Source: Fimbriosthenelais zetlandica
Taxonomy: Eukaryota
Assembly (NCBI GenBank): GCA_977030845.1
Contig: OZ365110.1
Span: 41,168,001-41,232,000 of the forward strand
Reading direction: 5' to 3'
DNA: 64,000 bases
Position 1 is the first letter of the stretch. Each line of letters starts with the position of its first letter. This document shows, piece after piece, positions 22,703 to 64,000 of this stretch. A model generated the notes under the pieces. That model was not told the origin of the DNA and searched no databases. It worked only from the letters and a program-made list of their open reading frames with translations. The position numbers and the translations under genes are program-made.

Positions 22703-24898
22703 TAAAGGCATAAAAGGGATCTAGAAAAAATATTTCCAATTTTTGGCAACTGGTTATCCATTTTGGGTTCTATTTACAATAAATCAATTATTTGAATCAA
22801 TTATTAGAAAAGAACCATAAACATAACTTCTTGTGAGTTATGGTTTATGCAGCCTGATGGATTGACCCTGATTGTATCTGTTTGTATTGAACATTGGCAC
22901 CCCGTGCGTGTGAGCAGTACACCAGTGTTAATCGTGTAATCTTCCAAAGAAGGGCCAAGGGTAAGCCTTGTGTATTATATGGATAATCCCTTAGTTAATA
23001 TTCTCCCTACTGATTCGCCACCAGAACTGTATAATCTATCCATATATTGAATGCTGGCCATTTTCTGTCAGATCAACTGTGATGCTTGGTTGTATGGTGG
23101 TTGGGGGTGGGGGTATTATAGGTGATGGGGATGGAGGGGTGGGGGTGCATGGGGGTTGGTTTCAGGGGAATTTGGTATACAGAAGTAAAAGCGGAGGCGG
23201 TATAGAATCATGTCATACTTGAACCTCTTCAGTATGTATGGTGTATACCTATCTTCCCAATAACAGGGGACGAGAGGATAATGATGACCTGTGTAAAAAA
23301 GTGAAGAGGAATTGGCTGAAAATCGTGCGGTGGTGAGAGATGAGAAAGGCTTATTGTGATGCAGTAAAAACTGTATGATACCAGCATTATATGAGCAGCT
23401 CTGTGATGAAATGATGAAAACTTACTTATACAAATACCACGTCTACCCGTAGTTTCTAGCCTAATCATGGAAGTCATGCTATATTTTTAATACATCTTTC
23501 AAAAGTAACTGTAATTTGGTGAGAATTGAAAAGGATATTTTAGACTAAATTTATTGTTATATGTATGCCCCCATATATATGATCACACTGTGTGTTTGTT
23601 ATCCGGTCAAGTGATTGACTACACTCTATGGGGAGATTTTCTTCAGTACATATTCTAACATTGAGTGTTAAGTGTGCAAATGTTTGAGCGCATATCAAGG
23701 CTAAGCATGGTCGGTCCCTTTTATAACCTAGATATTCTCATGGTCCCTAGGCCTACATGGGCTAGAAAATAACCCTTCTAGCAGGGCCCAGAAGTGTAAA
23801 AGAGCTTTGCCAAAAAGTTGTGTTTAAGATGTAAATCGAGGTTTTGTGGAATGCCGAATCGGCCATGTTTTCGGCTTTGCATATTATGTGTGTTTGAATT
23901 TGCCAATCTTCGCTTCTTCATTCACTTGTTCCTTCCTGCCTTCCTTCTTATCTTCTACCTAGCTACATCCCTCCCGTCCTAATTTCCATTCCCCATATTC
24001 CTTCATTCCTTCTCCAGCGCTTTCATTCTTCTCCTTTTTCTTCTTTTCCGTGGATCGTTCGCAACAACACTTTGTTTTTGTATTGATTATGCCTATTACA
24101 TTGTATATATGTACATTTGTACACCTAACATTTCCCTCGCGAACTTCTCGCCTACCTTCTCACCCTCTCCTGTCCCCAGTTCATCATTTGCACCCCACTC
24201 CTCACCCTTCTCTATAGCACCTATTCTCTTTTCCTCCATTTTATACATCTCCCAAGGACAAAGGATGATCAAAAGTCGTCTCGTACATTCATTTCCTTCT
24301 CCTTGGCAGATCCCCATCTCTGATATGTGTATTCATTTGCACAGTCATCTATACCAGCCTGCTTCCACCACAAAGACTCGCGACAAAAACAAAATCATCA
24401 TTTTCTTTAATGCCATATCTACCTAGTCCATATGCCTCGCTTTACTAACTTTAATGATATCATTTTTGTCGCCCCAAGTTATACAGACCTGTTAACCCCA
24501 TCGCTAAAATTTGTGGCAGTAAAACTGCCATATCGCCCTAATGTAACGTCTTTAATGATGCCTCAAACACTTTACCTACCAGTTAACTTTGTCTCTCATC
24601 TACATATATACACTTAGCGCTGCTTTTTCCTCACCTTATCGAGACAATGCTTGGCGCGCTGGAGGCTATACTTTGGGTGAAGTACATTAATGGGTGCCGC
24701 AGTGAAACCAATATCTCCAGGTTTTAAGGTATTATATTGAAATAGTTTTGTTTCAGCCAAAGCTTTTTCTTTTCATCCAAGGCTTTGCCTCTAGTTTTTG
24801 TGCATGCAGATTCTGGGCTTATTCTGCATACCCCGAATCTTGCCCTCCGGAGTCTACTCTCCAGCTTCTGATTTTGCTTTATATCCTATTCTTCCTTC

Positions 24899-24990
24899 AT
24901 CCATCCATCCATTATCCATCCATCCATTATCCATCCATCCATCCATCCATCTATCCATCCATCCATCCATCAATACATTCATCCATCTAT
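24899..24990. repeat. (CCAT)n microsatellite, interrupted
   Basis: ccatccatccat with ccattat variants. Confidence 0.93.
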
Positions 24991-27183
24991 CCATTCTTCT
25001 TGCTCTTCTTTTTTCTATCTCCATGTCTCTTCTCCCTTACATACTTTCCACCTCTTCTCTTCTCCTGCTCCCCTCTCTCTCTCACCCATCTCTCTATCTT
25101 TAACCATACTATAGAAGAAGGCCATTGTTCCAGGCAGAACAATCAAGACCTGCCAGAGCTAATCCGGCGGCAGAGAAAGAAGTCGGAGATCGTACCTGAT
25201 CGCTTTGAAAGGCAGTAGAAGCGTGCTGGGATCCGCTCCCTAACTTTGATCTCTGTTAGAAGTGTCAGGCATTCGCACGTGCACGTGCGCCTCTTTTTTA
25301 ACCACCTACTTTTTAACCCCCCCCCCCCCCCCTCACCCCCCCTCCCATCACCCCCATCCCGACCACCCCACTGTCTTATTCTCTTATTCCTCTACTCTCC
25401 TGTCACCATCTTTGCATACCCGACTACCTTTGATATCTGCAAGGTTTCTAGCATATGTGGAATCTTATCAATCAATACAACTGTCACATTTAAAGAAATA
25501 CCACTTTCCTGATGCTAAATATTCTTGATGTATTTTGTATATACATGTATCAATAATTTAAAAGGTTAATGAATTTTGATATGGAAAATCGAAAGAGCAT
25601 CGGTCTGATAAAAACAATGGGAAAATCAGTTAAATAAATACTAATTGTGTGAAATCTAGTAACTACAAAATTTCTCACCTAAATTCATATAGAATTTTAT
25701 ACTGTCATTTACTGTATACATGTGCAGGTGCAGGGTTTGCAATGTTCTAACACTTCAGATACCATTAAATATTATTGAGTCACAATATTGAGCGAAAATA
25801 ATTAATTTAATATTTGAGTGAAAGCAATATGACTATACATGATTGTGACTTGTAGAGGCCACATATACCACAAGTGTCAAAGAGATCATTGAAGAACTAT
25901 ATCATTGCAAAAATACTGTTTCTAACCTTTGGTCATTGGAGAATGAGCAGTGATCGAGTTACATGGGATTCCAACCATAAAGTATAGATAGATAGGGACT
26001 GTGTTCTCAGGTGCACCGAATCAGTGCGGTCTCCTGTAACTTTTCACTGCATTAAACAGTCATTTGTAAGGATGTACTGCACAAAGCTTGCCCGGGGGTT
26101 ACACACTTTATATATGCTGTAATTCAGGTTCACAGTAACAGAATTCCCCACCTTTTGTCGTCGGTTTTGATTATGTATTTCCTAAGATGTGCATTTCACA
26201 GTAAGGCAACGTGGGGACGCAGTCTCCCAACATGAGACGAGAGAGTCTATGAAAGGAGATCTCATGGTTACAAAGAGTTACGAAGGCGGTTCATTCTAGG
26301 TAAAGTTCAAATATCAAAGTCAAAATCAGATCTGCCCACTCCCATTCCCTCAGTGTCGCGTCAGGTGGGGGATGAGGATGGGGAGGACATTATATAATCC
26401 TCATCAATGATTGACAAGGAAACTACTTTATCTTTGAAGGGATGAACTCTCATCACAAAATATGCAAATATTGTGGACGGAATTTTGAGAGAGAGAAATA
26501 AGGAAAGAAAACCCTCAAAAAAAACTTTTAATTATTAAAGTGGACAGGGAAAACAGTCTCAATATGAATACATGTTGTTATGGTAAAAAGGTTCATTAGC
26601 ATGTGTACGTCAATGACCATTAGTGACGTTCAGATGACGTTGAGAAATGTATTAATTAAATAACTAAGGATGTTCTAGTGTGAAATTTGTACCAGACAGG
26701 AAGTAGCGGAGCAGGTTGAAGACTCGACCTGTCACCCTTTAACGAGGGGATATTGCAATGTTTGCTGTTTGTATTGCAAAGGCCTAAGCACAGCTTTTGT
26801 GTACGTGCCAAGGGCCAATTTACACATGCATACAATGCCTTGATTGGCCTCAGGCCCTCCTTAGCCAGGTGTGAAAGTAGATTGTATGTATACTGCATCT
26901 CTATAATGGGTTAGTTAAACGTCCTCTGTCTGTATGAAGCTGGTCTTCATTCTACATGTAGCGCCAAATGCAAGGTCCCTGTCTTTTACAGGAACAAAGT
27001 ACAATTTGATGTCTATAGTAATTATTGTGCATGTTATTTAATAAAATTACTATTGTTATAATATTGATTAAGTAATAGTGTAATAATACGTGTATTTGGT
27101 GATTTTTTATGATTATTTTTTCCATTTGTTTTTTAATTAGTTATTTTCTAACAAGAAAGATATGACGAAATGATCCACTTTTT

Positions 27184-41465: not shown

Positions 41466-41531
41466 CATCTACACGCATGGCTGAACCTTGGAATCAACAT
41501 ACAAGTAGAGCCAATGACGGCGGACCAAGTC

Positions 41532-41548
41532 AGGTCAGTGTGAGGTCA
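41532..41548 (+). promoter_or_regulatory. Perfect DR5 nuclear-receptor element (RARE type)
   Basis: AGGTCA-gtgtg-AGGTCA, ~1.05 kb upstream of the KLF2/4 ATG. Confidence 0.6.
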
Positions 41549-42223
41549 CATTCACGCGGCTTTCCCCAAAATGTAGACACATGGTCTCACACACACCTAC
41601 ACATTATAGACGCACGTCATCACTGCTCCAGGCTTCCGCATGTCTATGCTTTTCCAGGGCGCCCTGCTCCAGTGACCTTATTTATGCATAGCATGTGTAC
41701 ACTAGTATCTAGAGGCCGCTCTATAGATGGTTCCATCTCGGTGCAAACTTTGTGGCCCATTTTCAGTGCAAATAAAATTAAATTTCTCACAGCCGAACAG
41801 AGCAGAAATAATTTGTTATGCACTGGCCTTCACTTTATGCCTGTGTTAATTAATTCGGAACTTTAATTAACGTTTTGAAATTAAACAGATATTGCATTAA
41901 TAGAAAGAAACGTATATAGATTTCGATGTTCGAGGTCGTGCGTCTATAGTGCATATGGGATGAGTACTTGGTATAGGCTAGTGGTGGAAGAGGACTTTTC
42001 AGGACAGGATAATAATTAAATTTGATGATAAAATGTTTCCATCTGCTACCATTAACGCAGGAATATATAATGGTCATTTGCAAAATTTGCTGATCTATTT
42101 TTTCAGAATTGGTAGGGAAATTACAAGGGAGTTTTGTGGGAAAATATGAGCGGGGGAGCAGTGGCCTACGTCTTCACACGGTGGCGGTCTGACTCGATCT
42201 GCCAGCAGCCTGAATGCCTGGCG

Positions 42224-42265
42224 GACTTATATAGCGGTCTAAAAATAGATTTTCTCTCGACCAAT
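42224..42265 (+). promoter_or_regulatory. Proximal KLF2/4 promoter element: CTTATATA-GCGG-MEF2 (CTAAAAATAG at 42239-42248) plus CCAAT box (42261)
   Basis: gacttatatagcggtctaaaaatag...accaatcagcg; canonical MEF2 decamer ~350 bp upstream of the predicted ATG. Confidence 0.75.
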
Positions 42266-42600
42266 CAGCGTTGAGGAACAGAGGGATCCCGGTCATACTG
42301 CAGAGTAATAGCAATTTACTAGAAATTCCATCGTTATTCACTCACAAATGGGTTCCTAGATGGGTAGAAGAGAGTCACGCTTCTGATTTGGAGAGTTTTT
42401 GGAGAGCTATAAGTAATTTTACACGAGGGATTCCGATCAGTTGTTGATTTGATCTTGACATAGAGACATTTGTGGATAGAGCAATAGATTGACAAACATT
42501 TTCCAGCCTGCAAAGCAGCAAAGGACTTTTGCATTGGTGAAAGTTTGGACTTCGGTTGTTGATATATACATTCAGCCTCCCCAGGTTTCATCAAGAGAAA

Positions 42601-42693
42601 ATGACTTCAATGGTTGATCCTTTACTTACTTCTACTAACGACATGTATTCTTCAGTGTACAACAAATCAGAGGATACCATCGACCTACAAAGT
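42601..42693 (+). CDS. KLF2/4: KLF2/4 first coding exon (MTSMVDPLLTSTNDMYSSVYNKSEDTIDLQS)
   Basis: ATG at 42601; 93 nt; strong AGT|gtaagt donor; phase 0 joins VWADVESFL to give [13 protein letters not shown]; an upstream non-coding exon is possible. Confidence 0.75.
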
Positions 42694-44393
42694 GTAAGTA
42701 TTGACAACCTTTTTCAAGCATTTACTTTTTTAAAAGCATTTTCGCAAAATATTAATGTTACTCTGTCAATACAGCAATAGTTGGATATCAGGTGAGGAAG
42801 TGATTGTAAATTAAGCTAGGTGACATTATTTAGATGTGAAGCTAATAATTAGTGGTAGAAACCAGGTGGTAGCAGCTGGGGATGGACAGACAGTGACTGA
42901 CATAAATGATTTATTTCCCCATGTCCATCAAGTAAGTATTGTGTCTCATAAGATAAAGGACATTAAACATCGATTCTCTATTATTATGAAACGCACACTT
43001 GGTTTTAATAAAACTCACTCTTTTGATCACAACAAAAGCCGCGACTTTAGTACATTAGATAGGCTGGGAGACAGGGAGCGCGTGGTGGTATAGCGTTTGT
43101 TGGCAATCCTACGTCAGAGATTCCCACCCGCTTGGGAAAGGAACATAGAACGCTACACTTGTGTCCCGTCTCTGCATGGCCATGGCCGTTCAAGCGAATG
43201 TTCCACCAGAACTTTCATGAATACTCTCCGCTTGAGATAGTTTACATGCCTAAATCATCCTATAAGCTGTTTATTGACTCAAAAAACAACCATGCCTTAC
43301 AGCCCTTATCATTCAAAATGTCGCTAAGTGCAGCGAGAGTGAATATTTATCGATTATTTTGTGCGCAGATGACTTTTGAATGACTGAGTGTTGTGGCGCC
43401 AAAAATACAGCACTTAATCATCGTCTGCTGGTGTTTGGTTTTGGAGAGGTGGGGGATTTCCTCCCAACTCCTCTCAGCGGTACAGTACCGCCCCCTAGTT
43501 GATGCGACTGAAACTATTGCGGTATAGCATCGTATAGTCAAGATGAGTTTCCCCATAAACTAACCTAGTACCGTTAGCACAGTATCCAAACATGTGGTAC
43601 CTTAATATGGGGTACTAGTCTTCATTGTGGGGCACTGTTTCAAAAGTAAAATTACCAATGCAAAGTCTATCGCTCAGCCTCTATGTCAGAAGCCAAGTGT
43701 ATACACATGGCACCTGGTTTGTTGCCGTATGTTGGTTGTGTAACTTGACTGTAGGTGTCGCTAGCGTCTGTAAGTTTGGGACGCAGCTTAGCTGTGGTTG
43801 GCTAATGGGGGATGACTGAGACACAGGTGAGAGACTGATTTACAATAAAAGAAAAGGTGCGCGCTCCAGCTGTCACATTACAATCCCGGGAGTTAAAACA
43901 GTAAGTCATCGAGCTTAACACTTAGGATTAGTAGGAGAATCTTAGAAGCATTAACATGGAAGGCGTAAACAAACAGGGCACCATGTGCCATGTCATGAAG
44001 GTTAGTCTTTGTAACTAATATACCAATAATATTGGTGGACCTTTATTTTAGGTTTCGTTTCATATTTACTCATCTTTAAATTTACTTTAAGGATGAGAAC
44101 TTTACCTGTTTTCTAGGAAAAGGAAGTTTTGATTTTTAAAAATTATTATCTTCCTTGGATAATTAAATAGGGTTCACCACTTGTTGTGAAGTACATGATT
44201 GTATACTTCCCTGAGATATGTTTTAAGTCATTCGGTTGTAAGGCAGTTTGAGGGTCTAGAAAACTAAAATGAACATAATTGCATTATAGTTTATATTGCG
44301 AGAGTAGGATGATGTTTGGAGATTGATATATTTTTTATGTTTTCATTTGTATGGCCGAGTTATTTATGTATGTTTTTATTTGTATTTTTTTAG

Positions 44394-45728
<1,335 letters not shown>

Positions 45729-61338: not shown

Positions 61339-64000
61339 ATTTTACTGTAAAAAGTCTGAAAGAAGAGATCACTGCTACCAAATCATAGAGTGGATGTCGA
61401 TCACCAAGGAGGCTGCTAAAGCCAAGGGTGGAAGCGACAGGGAGCCGATCACAGAAGCTAGGAAATCCACAACAGAACCCAATATCTGGGACCAAGTCTT
61501 TGAGCCCGAGACACCAACCCTCAATGGAGGGTCTGGGAAGAATAAGCTAAAACAAGGAAATGTTGAAAATGGAAGAGAAAGAACCGATAATGATGCACAC
61601 AATCATGATGTTACGTCAACAAATGGAGGAAGTAGAGAGGAGGAGGGGAAGAGGAGAGATAATGGTGGAAATGATAAAGAATCCGATCATTCCTGGCTTG
61701 TAAGTCAGTTATACGGGGAAGAAAATGAGGAAGGAGAGGTTGGGGATGGACAACAAGAGAATTCAGAAAGTGGCCATGTAAGCCTGACTGATGGAAACAA
61801 TGGATTGGGTCAGGAAGCATTGTCACAGTCTCCCAATACCGGAGGGATCCACCACTCTACCGATGGACAGGTAGGCGGGGAAGGGATGACCACTGCCCCT
61901 CACACTGACCAGTCCAGCAGCTGGTGGAATGCTGGACAGTGGACTGGAAATTGGATGGGTGGATGGCCTGGCGTTGTTCCACCACATCCGCATCCATACA
62001 CTTCTAATAATACTGAAAGTACACAAGCTTATAACGCATGGCTTTCTGAATACAACCGGTCTCAGGCTAACCACTACTGGAGACAGGGGTCCTGGGATGG
62101 GAGATATCGGGACAGGAGTCAGGATAGGAGGTACAGTCGTGACAGGAGCCGTTCACAAGAGCATGACTGGCGGGATCATAGGAGGAGAGAGACCTCTGAT
62201 AGGGAAAGGGATAGAAAAAAGGAGAAGGAAAGGAGCTCAAGAGATGACAGGGACAGGAAAGATGGTAGGAGAAGTGGTAGGGATTATGACAGGTCGAGGA
62301 GTAGTACTACATCAGGTTCACACAGTGGCAGAAGTAAAAGTTACCACACTGATAGTAGGCGAGAGAAGGAGCCTACAAGGAGTGACTCCTATCGGGCCAG
62401 AAGAAGGGACAGAGACAGCTACCAGGAGGACAGGAAGGACAGAGATCAGTCACGACACAGTGAACGCTACTCTTCGAGACGTGAATCCAACGAGAGGGAA
62501 TCCCGGAGCAGAGATACAAATGGGGAAAACTCAAGTGTGAAAGATAGAAGGGATTCCCGTTCACGGAGAGACAATCGGGACCCAGCGTACCGGGATAGGA
62601 GCAGAGGCTCTAATGAACCCGCTGTATTGGACCAAACAAAGGAGAAAAGCCTCGAGAAGGCAAATGAGTGCTTTCTTAATGATGAAGTTACCTTGAAAAA
62701 GCAAGAGAATAATAGGGACCCTCCGAAGTCTTCGAGACCGGCAGAAAGCAAAAGTGATGATGGAGTTAAGATGGATGTCGGTCTGAAAAAAAGTTCTGAA
62801 AGAGAAGTGCCCAATGCCACTGTTCAAAAAGAGGAAAAGAAAAGAGGTGACAAGGCAAACCAAAGTGGAAAGGTTAGTGAGACGAAACGGACAAGAATCA
62901 GAATTAAGAGTTCATCTGACTCAGGATCAGAATCCAGCTCCTCTTCCTCCTCCTCTTCATCCTCTGGTTCAGGTTCCTCTAGCTCTGGATCCAGCTCCAG
63001 TTCAGACTCCAGTTCCAGTTCCTCCAGTGATGAGGAAGACGAGGATGAAGCAAAAGAGACTGAGGAGCAAGAAGAGAAAGGAAAGGTTGAGAAGTTAGAA
63101 TCTACAGCGACTCATGGGCATGAGAGAGAGCATCTTGAGAATGAGAAGGAATCTGCAAAAGTGACATTAGATGATGCACAAAGCAAAGGTGGACAAGAAA
63201 AGTGTGGTCTTTCCCCTTCCCATATCACTAGGAAAGAAAAGGAAAAAGATAAACTGCAGCAAGAAAAAGATAAGAGATCACAGCCATTCAACAATAGATT
63301 GCCTGTTCCTCGCCAAGTGGGTTTAAAAGAAAAAATAAAAATAAAACTGAAACCACGGCCTATGATTATGAAACAAGAGCTTCATATGAAGCCTGTTGAT
63401 CTTCTGGCTACAGATGATCTCACTACTGAGTGTTCTGAGCCTGACATTAAAGGAAATGTGATGTGTGTTGAAGAAAAGGACATACAAGAAGGGGAGAAAA
63501 TAGGAAAGGAGGAGGAGAAAATAGGACAAGAGGAGGAGAAAGTAAGAAAAGAAGAGATTGGAAACGATGTGGAGAACATGGGAAAAGAGGAGGACATAGG
63601 GAAAGAAGAGGAGGAAATAGGAAAACAAGGGGAGGAAATAGGAAAACAAGAGGAGGATATAAGGAAAAAAGAGGAGGAAATAGAGGAAGGGAAAGATGGA
63701 AAGAGCGAGAACCATGAAGTGCTTTATCCCCATGAAAGCATGGCTTCATCTTTAGATGTCCCAGAACAAGAAGATAAAAATGAATATGCATTACAAACAG
63801 TGGCAGAAACGAGCCTTGGTGCTAATAAAGCCAACTTGAATTTGAATCAACCAAGTGAGAAAACCAACCAAGATCCTGTAATAAACCCTGAAAAGAAGAA
63901 GGAAGAGAAACCGATTGTCTATGATGATCCACCCAGCCCTCGTATCCCTGGATTCATGGATTCACCGAACCCAGGGTCTGTAGGAGGTGACCTGAACTAC
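61339..64000 (+). CDS. Giant exon / long open frame (>=887 codons, 3'-truncated) encoding an intrinsically disordered RS/RD/RE-rich, poly-Ser, acidic protein
   Basis: tgtttcag acceptor at 61338; the frame starting at 61340 (FYCKKSERRDHCYQIIEWMSITKE...) has no stop up to 64000; in-frame stop upstream at 61307; first ATG at 61394; absent from the ORF track because it lacks a stop. Confidence 0.85.
63488..63690 (+). repeat. 21-bp coding tandem repeat (EEEKIGK-type heptad)
   Basis: gaggaggagaaaatagga(a/c)aa units with period 21, in frame in the giant exon. Confidence 0.8.

What the first reader, a model, noticed from the sequence alone, without database searches (positions are those of the whole stretch)
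41532..41548. Perfect DR5 retinoic-acid-response-type element next to the distal MEF2 module of KLF2/4
Seen: AGGTCA-N5-AGGTCA with no mismatch, 67 bp from the MEF2 site, plus an overlapping AAGTCA half-site just upstream. Established: DR5 is the canonical RAR/RXR element, and echinoderms have RAR and RXR. Inference: KLF2/4 could be a direct retinoic-acid target here, linking RA signalling to a pluripotency-type factor in metamorphosis or regeneration. A fixed 12-base match is unlikely by chance within ~1 kb of a given promoter.
Basis: partly seen in the sequence, partly recalled or inferred. Interest (0 to 1): 0.7.

Follow-up and report, generated by a model that had tools for sequence, protein, structure and literature searches.

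The report
Candidate hormone-receptor site upstream of KLF2/4
A textbook-perfect docking site for retinoic-acid-type hormone receptors really does sit beside a conserved switch of a KLF2/4 gene. The animal is a spiralian invertebrate, not an echinoderm; the site is missing at the same place in ten of eleven related loci and nothing yet shows that it is used.

Summary
AGGTCAGTGTGAGGTCA lies at 41532-41548 (+) and is the only exact DR5 in the window; AAGTCA overlaps it by one base. The DNA is single copy.

Position relative to the KLF2/4-type gene:
- 16 bp 3' of a CCAAT box
- 66 bp 3' of the distal MEF2 site
- 707 bp 5' of the proximal MEF2 site
- 1,069 bp 5' of the exon-1 ATG

- The genome is not an echinoderm. 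The KLF protein's best relatives are lophotrochozoan, and mitochondrial COX1 writes invariant lysines as AAA.
- The genome does encode RAR, RXR and COUP-TF.
- The RAR ligand pocket differs from human RARgamma at Phe230 and Lys236, so retinoic acid binding is uncertain.
- All eleven other spiralian KLF2/4 loci keep the MEF2-CCAAT module. Only one carries a DR5-like repeat inside it.
- No sequencing run was listed, so transcription starts and expression could not be checked.
- The genome holds 1,985 exact DR5s, mostly in 11-bp satellites, and the scan flagged DR5 motifs at two other loci in it.

Verdict: a credible but untested, lineage-specific candidate nuclear-receptor element (about 0.4). 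A functionless chance motif is almost as likely (about 0.38). It is a new member of a known kind: mouse Klf2 is already a reported direct RAR target.

The parts
41532..41548 (+). Exact DR5: AGGTCA, 5-bp spacer GTGTG, AGGTCA
   Evidence: Single copy in the own genome.
41527..41532 (+). AAGTCA, a half-site-like hexamer overlapping the DR5 by one base; together they read as a GTCAG-GTCAG micro-duplication
   Evidence: Read directly from the sequence.
41476..41481 (-). Additional RGKTCA half-site (GGTTCA on the minus strand), 50 bp 5' of the DR5
41673..41678 (-). Additional exact AGGTCA half-site on the minus strand, 125 bp 3' of the DR5
41443..41465 (+). Distal module core: TTTTATAGCGG followed by the MEF2 site CTAAAATTAG (41456-41465)
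   Evidence: The same roughly 27-bp core occurs in the proximal module.
41511..41515 (+). CCAAT box of the distal module, 16 bp 5' of the DR5
42229..42265 (+). Proximal module: TATATAGCGG, MEF2 site CTAAAAATAG (42239-42248) and CCAATCAG (42261-42268); present in all 11 other spiralian loci examined
42601..42693 (+). KLF2/4 coding exon 1: 31 codons, donor AGT|GTAAGT
   Evidence: Homologous block in L002 at 8129-8233.
44394..45728 (+). KLF2/4 exon 2: 444 codons ending in three C2H2 zinc fingers and the stop codon
41477..41533 (+). Hypothetical alternative first exon 1a: ATG plus 19 codons ending CAG|GTCAGT, in phase with exon 2. Under this reading the first AGGTCA would be a 5' splice site. Unproven.
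   Evidence: No RNA data were available.
43956..44000 (+). Exon-like block inside intron 1 (ATG to AAG|GTTAGT, 15 codons, phase 0), conserved in the closest relative
   Evidence: 94% identity to L002 9608-9640.

Best explanation
The motif is a genuine, single-copy, sequence-perfect DR5 nuclear-receptor element. It arose in this lineage beside the distal MEF2-CCAAT module of a spiralian KLF2/4 gene. The most likely mechanism is as follows. An RXR heterodimer binds the two AGGTCA half-sites head to tail; RAR/RXR is the best candidate, and COUP-TF-type receptors are likely competitors. The bound receptor then adds a hormone- or retinoid-dependent input, activating or repressing, to the MEF2-driven promoter.

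Shown here: the motif, its position, the conserved neighbouring module, and the presence of RAR, RXR and COUP-TF genes.

Inferred: occupancy in vivo, which receptor binds, and any effect on transcription. The confidence of 0.4 is for 'a functional nuclear-receptor site'. The narrower claim, 'RA-responsive through RAR/RXR', is about 0.25.
For: - Motif: it matches the consensus exactly, against an expectation of about 0.01-0.04 per window.
- Position: it lies 16 bp from a CCAAT box and 66 bp from a MEF2 site. That MEF2 core module is kept in all 11 other spiralian KLF2/4 loci examined. A randomly placed DR5 in this window would fall within 100 bp of either module about 0.6% of the time.
- Extra half-sites: two more RGKTCA half-sites lie within 203 bp, against 0.35 expected.
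- Partial recurrence: L035 has AGGTCAccgcgGGTTCA between the MEF2 and CCAAT sites of its proximal module. The expected number of such hits over 17 modules is 0.005-0.03.
- Receptors: the genome encodes an RAR (DNA-binding exon 76 bits to human RARs against 49.7 for the next family; ligand-binding exons best to 6EU9), an RXR/USP and a COUP-TF.
- Binding precedent: the annelid RAR/RXR pair bound a labelled DR2 probe, and unlabelled DR5 (like DR1) competed that binding away, which the authors read as DR1/DR2/DR5 specificity (PMC5821490).
- Vertebrate precedent: mouse Klf2 is a cycloheximide-insensitive RAR target with RAR/RXR ChIP signal on a DR5-like element about 1.3 kb upstream of its start site (PMC3331760).
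Against: - No conservation: 10 of the 11 other spiralian loci, including the closest relative found (L002, 58% protein identity), have no DR-type repeat near their modules. BLAST finds no similarity around 41.5 kb even though exon 1 and an intronic block align.
- The L035 repeat sits on the other side of the CCAAT box, with a different second half-site and spacer, so it may be independent or a chance match.
- There are no expression, transcription-start, accessibility or binding data; no sequencing run was listed.
- Most motif-defined RAREs may not function: about 14,000 potential RAREs in mouse, many perhaps never used (PMC7259794).
- The genome carries 1,985 exact DR5s, mostly satellites.
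- The RAR pocket differs at Phe230 and Lys236, and gastropod RARs bind no RA (PMC5821490).
Confidence: 0.4

Rival explanations
1. The motif is a chance, lineage-specific 12-base match with no regulatory role. It may have been created by a small slippage event (GTCAG-GTCAG) and simply happens to lie near the distal module.
For: - The AGGTCA hexamer is not enriched in the window.
- Composition alone predicts about 56 exact DR5s genome-wide; the reversed control gives 164 and 1,985 are observed. A whole-genome scan for many motif types will therefore meet some near promoters, and two other DR5 notes exist in this genome.
- The repeat is absent from 10 of 11 orthologous loci, and no sequence similarity with L002 surrounds it.
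Against: - Landing within 20 bp of a CCAAT box and 66 bp of a deeply conserved MEF2 core is improbable for a random site: about 0.6% given one DR5 in the window.
- Extra half-sites flank it.
- A DR5-like repeat recurs in the L035 module.
- Inside an active promoter region, a perfect DR5 would be hard for expressed RXR heterodimers to ignore.
Confidence: 0.38
2. The site is functional but is used by another AGGTCA-binding receptor, for example COUP-TF homodimers or another RXR partner or orphan receptor, and has nothing to do with retinoic acid.
For: - At least 30 nuclear-receptor DNA-binding-domain loci are present, including COUP-TF, TR-like, E75/Rev-erb-like and ROR-like sequences.
- From general knowledge, COUP-TFs bind direct repeats of varied spacing and often oppose RAR/RXR.
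- This animal's RAR pocket is altered at Phe230 and Lys236, and some spiralian RARs bind no RA.
Against: A 5-bp spacing of perfect AGGTCA half-sites is the classical RAR/RXR preference, and the annelid heterodimer shares it. The half-sites lack the A/T-rich or TCA 5' extensions typical of monomeric receptor sites.
Confidence: 0.13
3. The first AGGTCA is part of a 5' splice site (CAG|GTCAGT) that ends an alternative first exon 1a (ATG 41477 to 41533). That exon would be transcribed from the distal module and spliced in frame to exon 2, so the 'DR5' would be a by-product.
For: - ATG 41477 opens 19 codons that end exactly at CAG|GT, in phase 0, the same phase as exon 1 and exon 2.
- The distal module repeats the TATA-like/MEF2/CCAAT layout of the proximal promoter.
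- The gene seems to have another alternative 5' exon at 43956-44000.
Against: - C at donor position +3 is rare in animal introns (general knowledge).
- The phase match has a one-in-three chance.
- No homologue of exon 1a was found in other loci.
- No RNA data exist.
- It does not explain the second exact half-site.
Confidence: 0.07

Closest known systems
Mouse Klf2 upstream RARE (Berry et al., Diabetes 2012; PMC3331760)
   Same: It is a DR5-type direct repeat about 1.3 kb upstream of a KLF2-family gene. There, RA induction survives cycloheximide, and RAR and RXR occupy the element by ChIP. The distance, element type and target gene family all resemble the present case.
   Different: The mouse half-sites as printed are degenerate (AGTCCA / AGGGCC), whereas these are perfect. 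No sequence homology between the two is shown. The present element has no functional data and is not shared by most other spiralian KLF2/4 loci, so common descent of the link is unsupported.
Canonical vertebrate DR5 RAREs (RARbeta2, Cyp26a1, Hoxa1 type)
   Same: Two RGKTCA half-sites in direct orientation with a 5-bp spacer, close to a promoter.
   Different: From general knowledge, those elements are conserved across vertebrates and validated by mutation, and they mostly use GTTCA-type half-sites. This one is exact AGGTCA, lineage-specific and unvalidated.
Platynereis dumerilii RAR/RXR system (PMC5821490; PDB 6EU9)
   Same: It is a spiralian RAR that heterodimerises with RXR. The pair bound a labelled DR2 probe, and unlabelled DR1 and DR5 competed that binding away. 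This genome's RAR ligand-binding exons are most similar to 6EU9.
   Different: The Platynereis RAR keeps all four carboxylate-contacting residues (PMC6947571). This animal's RAR has Lys236>Ser and Phe230>Val. No KLF target was reported in Platynereis.
Vertebrate KLF2 MEF2 promoter element
   Same: The adjacent TATA-like/MEF2/CCAAT module is the conserved context, found here in 12 of 12 spiralian loci.
   Different: The DR5 is an add-on to the distal copy in this lineage only. It is not part of the conserved module.

Membership tests
DR5-type retinoic acid response element (RARE) | Two RGKTCA half-sites in direct orientation separated by exactly 5 bp | tested here: met
   AGGTCAGTGTGAGGTCA at 41532-41548.
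DR5-type retinoic acid response element (RARE) | The organism encodes RAR and RXR able to heterodimerise on the element | tested here: met
   The genes are present. RAR lies on G000:C29 (L042/L015): its DNA-binding exon scores 76 bits to human RARs against 49.7 for the next family, and its ligand-binding exons score best to 6EU9. RXR/USP lies on G000:C1 (L009) and has ligand-binding exons. Heterodimer formation itself was not tested.
DR5-type retinoic acid response element (RARE) | Physical binding by RAR/RXR (EMSA, ChIP) | not testable with these tools
   There is only indirect precedent: in the annelid RAR/RXR EMSA, unlabelled DR5 competed away binding to a labelled DR2 probe (PMC5821490).
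DR5-type retinoic acid response element (RARE) | Retinoid-dependent, protein-synthesis-independent change in transcription of the linked gene | not testable with these tools
   No sequencing runs were listed for this locus.
DR5-type retinoic acid response element (RARE) | The receptor's ligand pocket is competent for retinoic acid | tested here: inconclusive
   The equivalents of Leu233, Arg278 and Ser289 are kept, but Phe230>Val and Lys236>Ser (residue list from PMC6947571).
DR5-type retinoic acid response element (RARE) | Evolutionary conservation of the element at the orthologous position (a supporting criterion, not a definition) | tested here: not met
   Of 11 other spiralian KLF2/4 loci, ten have no DR repeat near their modules and one (L035 8059-8075) has a DR5-like repeat in a different slot. 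No close relative was available.
KLF2/4-type Krueppel-like factor gene | Three C-terminal C2H2 zinc fingers, with best full-length matches to proteins named KLF2 or KLF4 | tested here: met
   Pfam zf-C2H2 and zf-H2C2_2 at residues 391-443. Full-length hits are mostly labelled Krueppel-like factor 2 in UniRef.
   COX1 writes all 10 lysines as AAA, including the invariant NHKDIG and TGIKIFSW positions. Echinoderm KLFs match only 22-28% of the protein, while lophotrochozoan ones match 100%.

The most novel reading that the evidence does not exclude
A retinoid/RXR-heterodimer input onto KLF2/4, acting next to the ancient MEF2 switch, is an old bilaterian wiring. On this reading it is shared between spiralians (this animal and the L035 species) and vertebrates (the mouse Klf2 DR5-like RARE at -1.3 kb), with the binding site turning over in position rather than being conserved base for base.
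Probability: 0.08. Interest if true: 0.6.

Novelty: new member of a known kind. Interest (0 to 1): 0.3.

Why it matters
If the site works, it would be one of the first candidate direct targets of a spiralian RAR/RXR pair. It would also suggest that the retinoid-to-KLF2 link seen in mouse preadipocytes has a counterpart outside vertebrates, beside a MEF2 switch that is conserved across phyla. As it stands it is a good, cheap candidate for EMSA and reporter testing, not a discovery.

Tried and rejected
- Repeat or transposon origin: rejected. The 321-bp stretch is single copy in the genome, TRF finds nothing at the site, and there is no Rfam match.
- Duplication of the proximal promoter carrying the DR5: rejected. 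Only a roughly 27-bp TATA-like/MEF2 core is shared, and a MAFFT alignment of the two modules shows no wider homology.
- RNA evidence: two run searches listed no run, so read laying could not be used. The transcription start, exon 1a and expression remain untested.
- Close-relative conservation: the nearest protein relative is only 58% identical (L002), and the second (P0002) had no retrievable DNA. An exact-pattern scan of metagenome contigs found nothing.
- Species identification: searching genome-note papers for the assembly size found nothing. COX1 breaks into pieces of 74 residues or fewer under the standard code, too short for the length-limited protein search, so the phylum is left unresolved. 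It is a spiralian, and the RAR is nearest to the annelid structure.
- DR elements at the RAR locus itself (possible autoregulation): none were found in the 8 kb examined; one DR4 lies about 10 kb away.
- The paper on the mollusc RAR pocket (PMC4197984) is not held. Residue information was taken from PMC6947571 instead.

Full report
**1. The observation**

The sequence at 41532-41548 (+) reads AGGTCAGTGTGAGGTCA, an exact AGGTCA-N5-AGGTCA.
- It is the only such match on either strand of the window, and none of 100 dinucleotide-preserving shuffles produced one.
- The relaxed RGKTCA-N5-RGKTCA pattern also matches only here, against 0.16 expected.
- AAGTCA at 41527-41532 overlaps the first half-site by one base. 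Locally the sequence reads as a GTCAG-GTCAG micro-duplication.
- The MEF2 consensus CTAAAATTAG lies at 41456-41465, 66 bases upstream.
- AGGTCA as a hexamer is not enriched in the window: 32 observed, 32.9 expected.
- The 321 bp around the site are single copy in the animal's own genome, are not tandemly repeated and match no Rfam family.

**2. How rare it is**

- From the observed half-site frequency, about 0.008 exact DR5s are expected per 64-kb window and about 56 per genome.
- The genome actually holds 1,985 (955 + 1,030) against 164 for the reversed-pattern control. Most of the listed ones lie in 11-bp tandem arrays.
- In the ordinary part of contig 1 I counted about 5 clusters in 7.6 Mb, roughly one per 1.5 Mb.
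- For one pre-chosen promoter the motif is therefore improbable (about 1e-4). But a whole-genome scan for many textbook motifs will meet a few by chance, and the scan's first readers flagged DR5 motifs at two other loci of this genome.

**3. The gene and the context**

- The ORF 44394-45728 (+) ends in three C2H2 fingers. Its full-length relatives are mostly labelled KLF2.
- Coding exon 1 is 42601-42693 (31 codons, donor GTAAGT) and is homologous to L002 8129-8233. Exon 2 starts at 44394 after a polypyrimidine-AG acceptor.
- A proximal module lies at 42229-42268: TATATAGCGG, MEF2 CTAAAAATAG, CCAATCAG. A distal copy of the roughly 27-bp core lies at 41443-41465, followed by a CCAAT at 41511-41515.
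- The DR5 therefore sits 16 bp 3' of the distal CCAAT, 707 bp 5' of the proximal MEF2 site and 1,069 bp 5' of the ATG.
- Two more RGKTCA half-sites flank it, at 41476-41481 (-) and 41673-41678 (-).

**4. What animal this is**

The evidence points elsewhere.
- The KLF protein's full-length matches are lophotrochozoan: Lingula, many molluscs, Owenia, Tubulanus. Echinoderm KLFs align only over the zinc fingers.
- The mitochondrial COX1 on G000:C79 writes all ten lysines as AAA, including those in the invariant NHKDIG and TGIKIFSW motifs, and writes Trp mostly as TGA. In the echinoderm mitochondrial code AAA is asparagine (established knowledge: NCBI table 9), so this is the general invertebrate code.
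- The RAR ligand-binding exons score 71 bits to the Platynereis RAR structure 6EU9 against 44 bits to human RARgamma.

The animal is a spiralian. I could not resolve the phylum.

**5. Receptors**

- A Pfam zf-C4 search found 55 matches in the genome.
- By sequence, L015/L042 on C29 is an RAR. Its second zinc-finger exon scores 76 bits to human RARalpha/beta/gamma against 49.7 for the next family. The hinge carries the KAHQET motif, and the ligand-binding exons match RARs best.
- L009 on C1 is an RXR/USP with ligand-binding exons nearby.
- L003 is a COUP-TF: 149 bits against 116 for the next family.
- TR-, E75- and ROR-like DNA-binding domains are also visible.
- In the annelid Platynereis the RAR/RXR heterodimer bound a labelled DR2 probe. 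Unlabelled DR1 and DR5 competed that binding away. RA activates the receptor only at micromolar doses, and gastropod RARs do not bind RA (PMC5821490).
- Using the residue list in PMC6947571, this animal's RAR keeps the equivalents of Leu233, Arg278 and Ser289 but has Phe230>Val and Lys236>Ser (WEQVSELSTSG).

Binding of the heterodimer to a perfect DR5 is therefore likely in vitro. Whether retinoic acid is the ligand is open.

**6. Conservation**

I fetched eleven other spiralian KLF2/4 loci: L002, L033 (Lingula), L034, L035, L036 (Owenia), L038, L039, L043, L044, L045 and L046 (Tubulanus).
- All carry the TATA-like/MEF2 core, usually followed by CCAATCAG. Six of the twelve loci, counting the window, carry two modules. 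This agrees with two earlier notes of the scan.
- Ten of the eleven have no direct, inverted or everted RGKTCA repeat near a module.
- L035 has AGGTCAccgcgGGTTCA at 8059-8075, between the MEF2 site and the CCAAT box of its proximal module.
- With the half-site rate measured on these 300 kb, 0.005 such hits are expected over 17 modules; with the empirical DR5 rate, 0.03.
- That single recurrence is suggestive. But the slot, the spacer and the second half-site all differ, so it is not evidence of descent.
- The closest relative, L002, shows no similarity around the site although exon 1 and an intronic block align.
- All available relatives are distant (58% protein identity or less).

**7. Precedent**

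- In mouse preadipocytes Klf2 is induced by RA and by an RAR agonist in the presence of cycloheximide, and a pan-RAR antagonist blocks the induction. RAR and RXR occupy a DR5-like element about 1,300 bp upstream of the start site (PMC3331760).
- Klf4 is also RA-induced, but through RARalpha acting on GC boxes (review PMC11477379).
- So 'KLF2 as a direct retinoid target' is already known in vertebrates.
- On the other side, about 14,000 potential RAREs are reported for the mouse genome, and many may never function (PMC7259794).

**8. Weighing**

For function:
- the exact consensus;
- close apposition to a module that is independently shown to be conserved;
- extra half-sites nearby;
- the receptors being present;
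- one partial recurrence in another species;
- the vertebrate precedent.

Against:
- no conservation in ten of eleven loci;
- no expression, accessibility or binding data, because no run was listed;
- a high genomic background of AGGTCA repeats;
- an RAR pocket of uncertain competence.

A further rival is that CAG|GTCAGT at 41531-41539 is the donor of an alternative first exon (ATG 41477, 19 codons, phase 0 with exon 2). It cannot be excluded without RNA data. It is weakened by the rare C at donor position +3 and does not explain the second half-site.

My estimates:

| Reading | Probability |
|---|---|
| Functional nuclear-receptor site | about 0.4 |
| ... RA-responsive through RAR/RXR (the narrower claim, within the 0.4) | about 0.25 |
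| ... used by another receptor, with no retinoic acid role (listed separately as a rival) | about 0.13 |
| Functionless chance motif | about 0.38 |
| Splice donor of an alternative exon | about 0.07 |

**9. Verdict**

The motif is real and sits in an interesting place. It is a testable candidate, not a finding. It is a new member of a known kind (a promoter-proximal DR5 element; KLF2 as a retinoid target). The echinoderm, metamorphosis and pluripotency framing is unsupported.

Noticed in passing
window 43956-44000 (+); L002 9608-9640: Inside intron 1 of KLF2/4 there is an exon-like block: ATG to AAG|GTTAGT, 15 codons (MEGVNKQGTMCHVMK), in phase with exon 2. It is 94% identical to the closest relative's locus while the surrounding intron is not alignable. 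It is a candidate conserved alternative first coding exon.
   Followed up: partly
window 41443-41465 and 42229-42248; L034 7946/8236; L035 7648/8014; L038 7466/8365; L044 8607/8891; L046 9482/9731: Two TATA-like/MEF2 modules, 250-900 bp apart, recur upstream of KLF2/4 in 6 of 12 spiralian loci. The dual arrangement itself looks old or repeatedly re-invented.
   Followed up: partly
L036 about 9790-9800; L035 about 8048-8058; L046 about 9775-9785: CArG-like boxes (CCATATATGG, CCATATAGGG, CCATATACGG) lie between the MEF2 site and the CCAAT box in three loci, suggesting an SRF-type input in some lineages. None was seen in the window.
   Followed up: no
G000:C1:838954-839876, C1:2455012-2455230, C1:730376-730436 and others: The genome holds 1,985 exact AGGTCA-N5-AGGTCA against 164 for the reversed control. 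Many lie in 11-bp tandem arrays that share the AGGTCA hexamer but differ in the 5-bp spacer, and they are concentrated in the first 3.5 Mb of contig 1.
   Followed up: no
L042 (G000:C29:6143001-6151000), minus strand: A compact RAR gene, with exons at L042 6735-6944, 6056-6253, 5119-5298, 4393-4590, 3810-4088 and 3404-3568. Relative to human RARgamma it has Phe230>Val and Lys236>Ser but keeps Leu233, Arg278 and Ser289. The helix-12 exon was not located. A roughly 45-bp tandem repeat fills the intron at L042 5288-5890.
   Followed up: partly
L037 (G000:C79:9182-13522): The mitochondrial COX1 has 13 TGA (Trp) codons, and all lysines are AAA. This fits the invertebrate mitochondrial code and rules out an echinoderm or flatworm code.
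   Followed up: yes
window 8490-8831, 11561-11928, 24748-25218, 63323-63791: Long 'ORFs' here are translations of short tandem repeats ([29 protein letters not shown] motifs), not genes.
   Followed up: no
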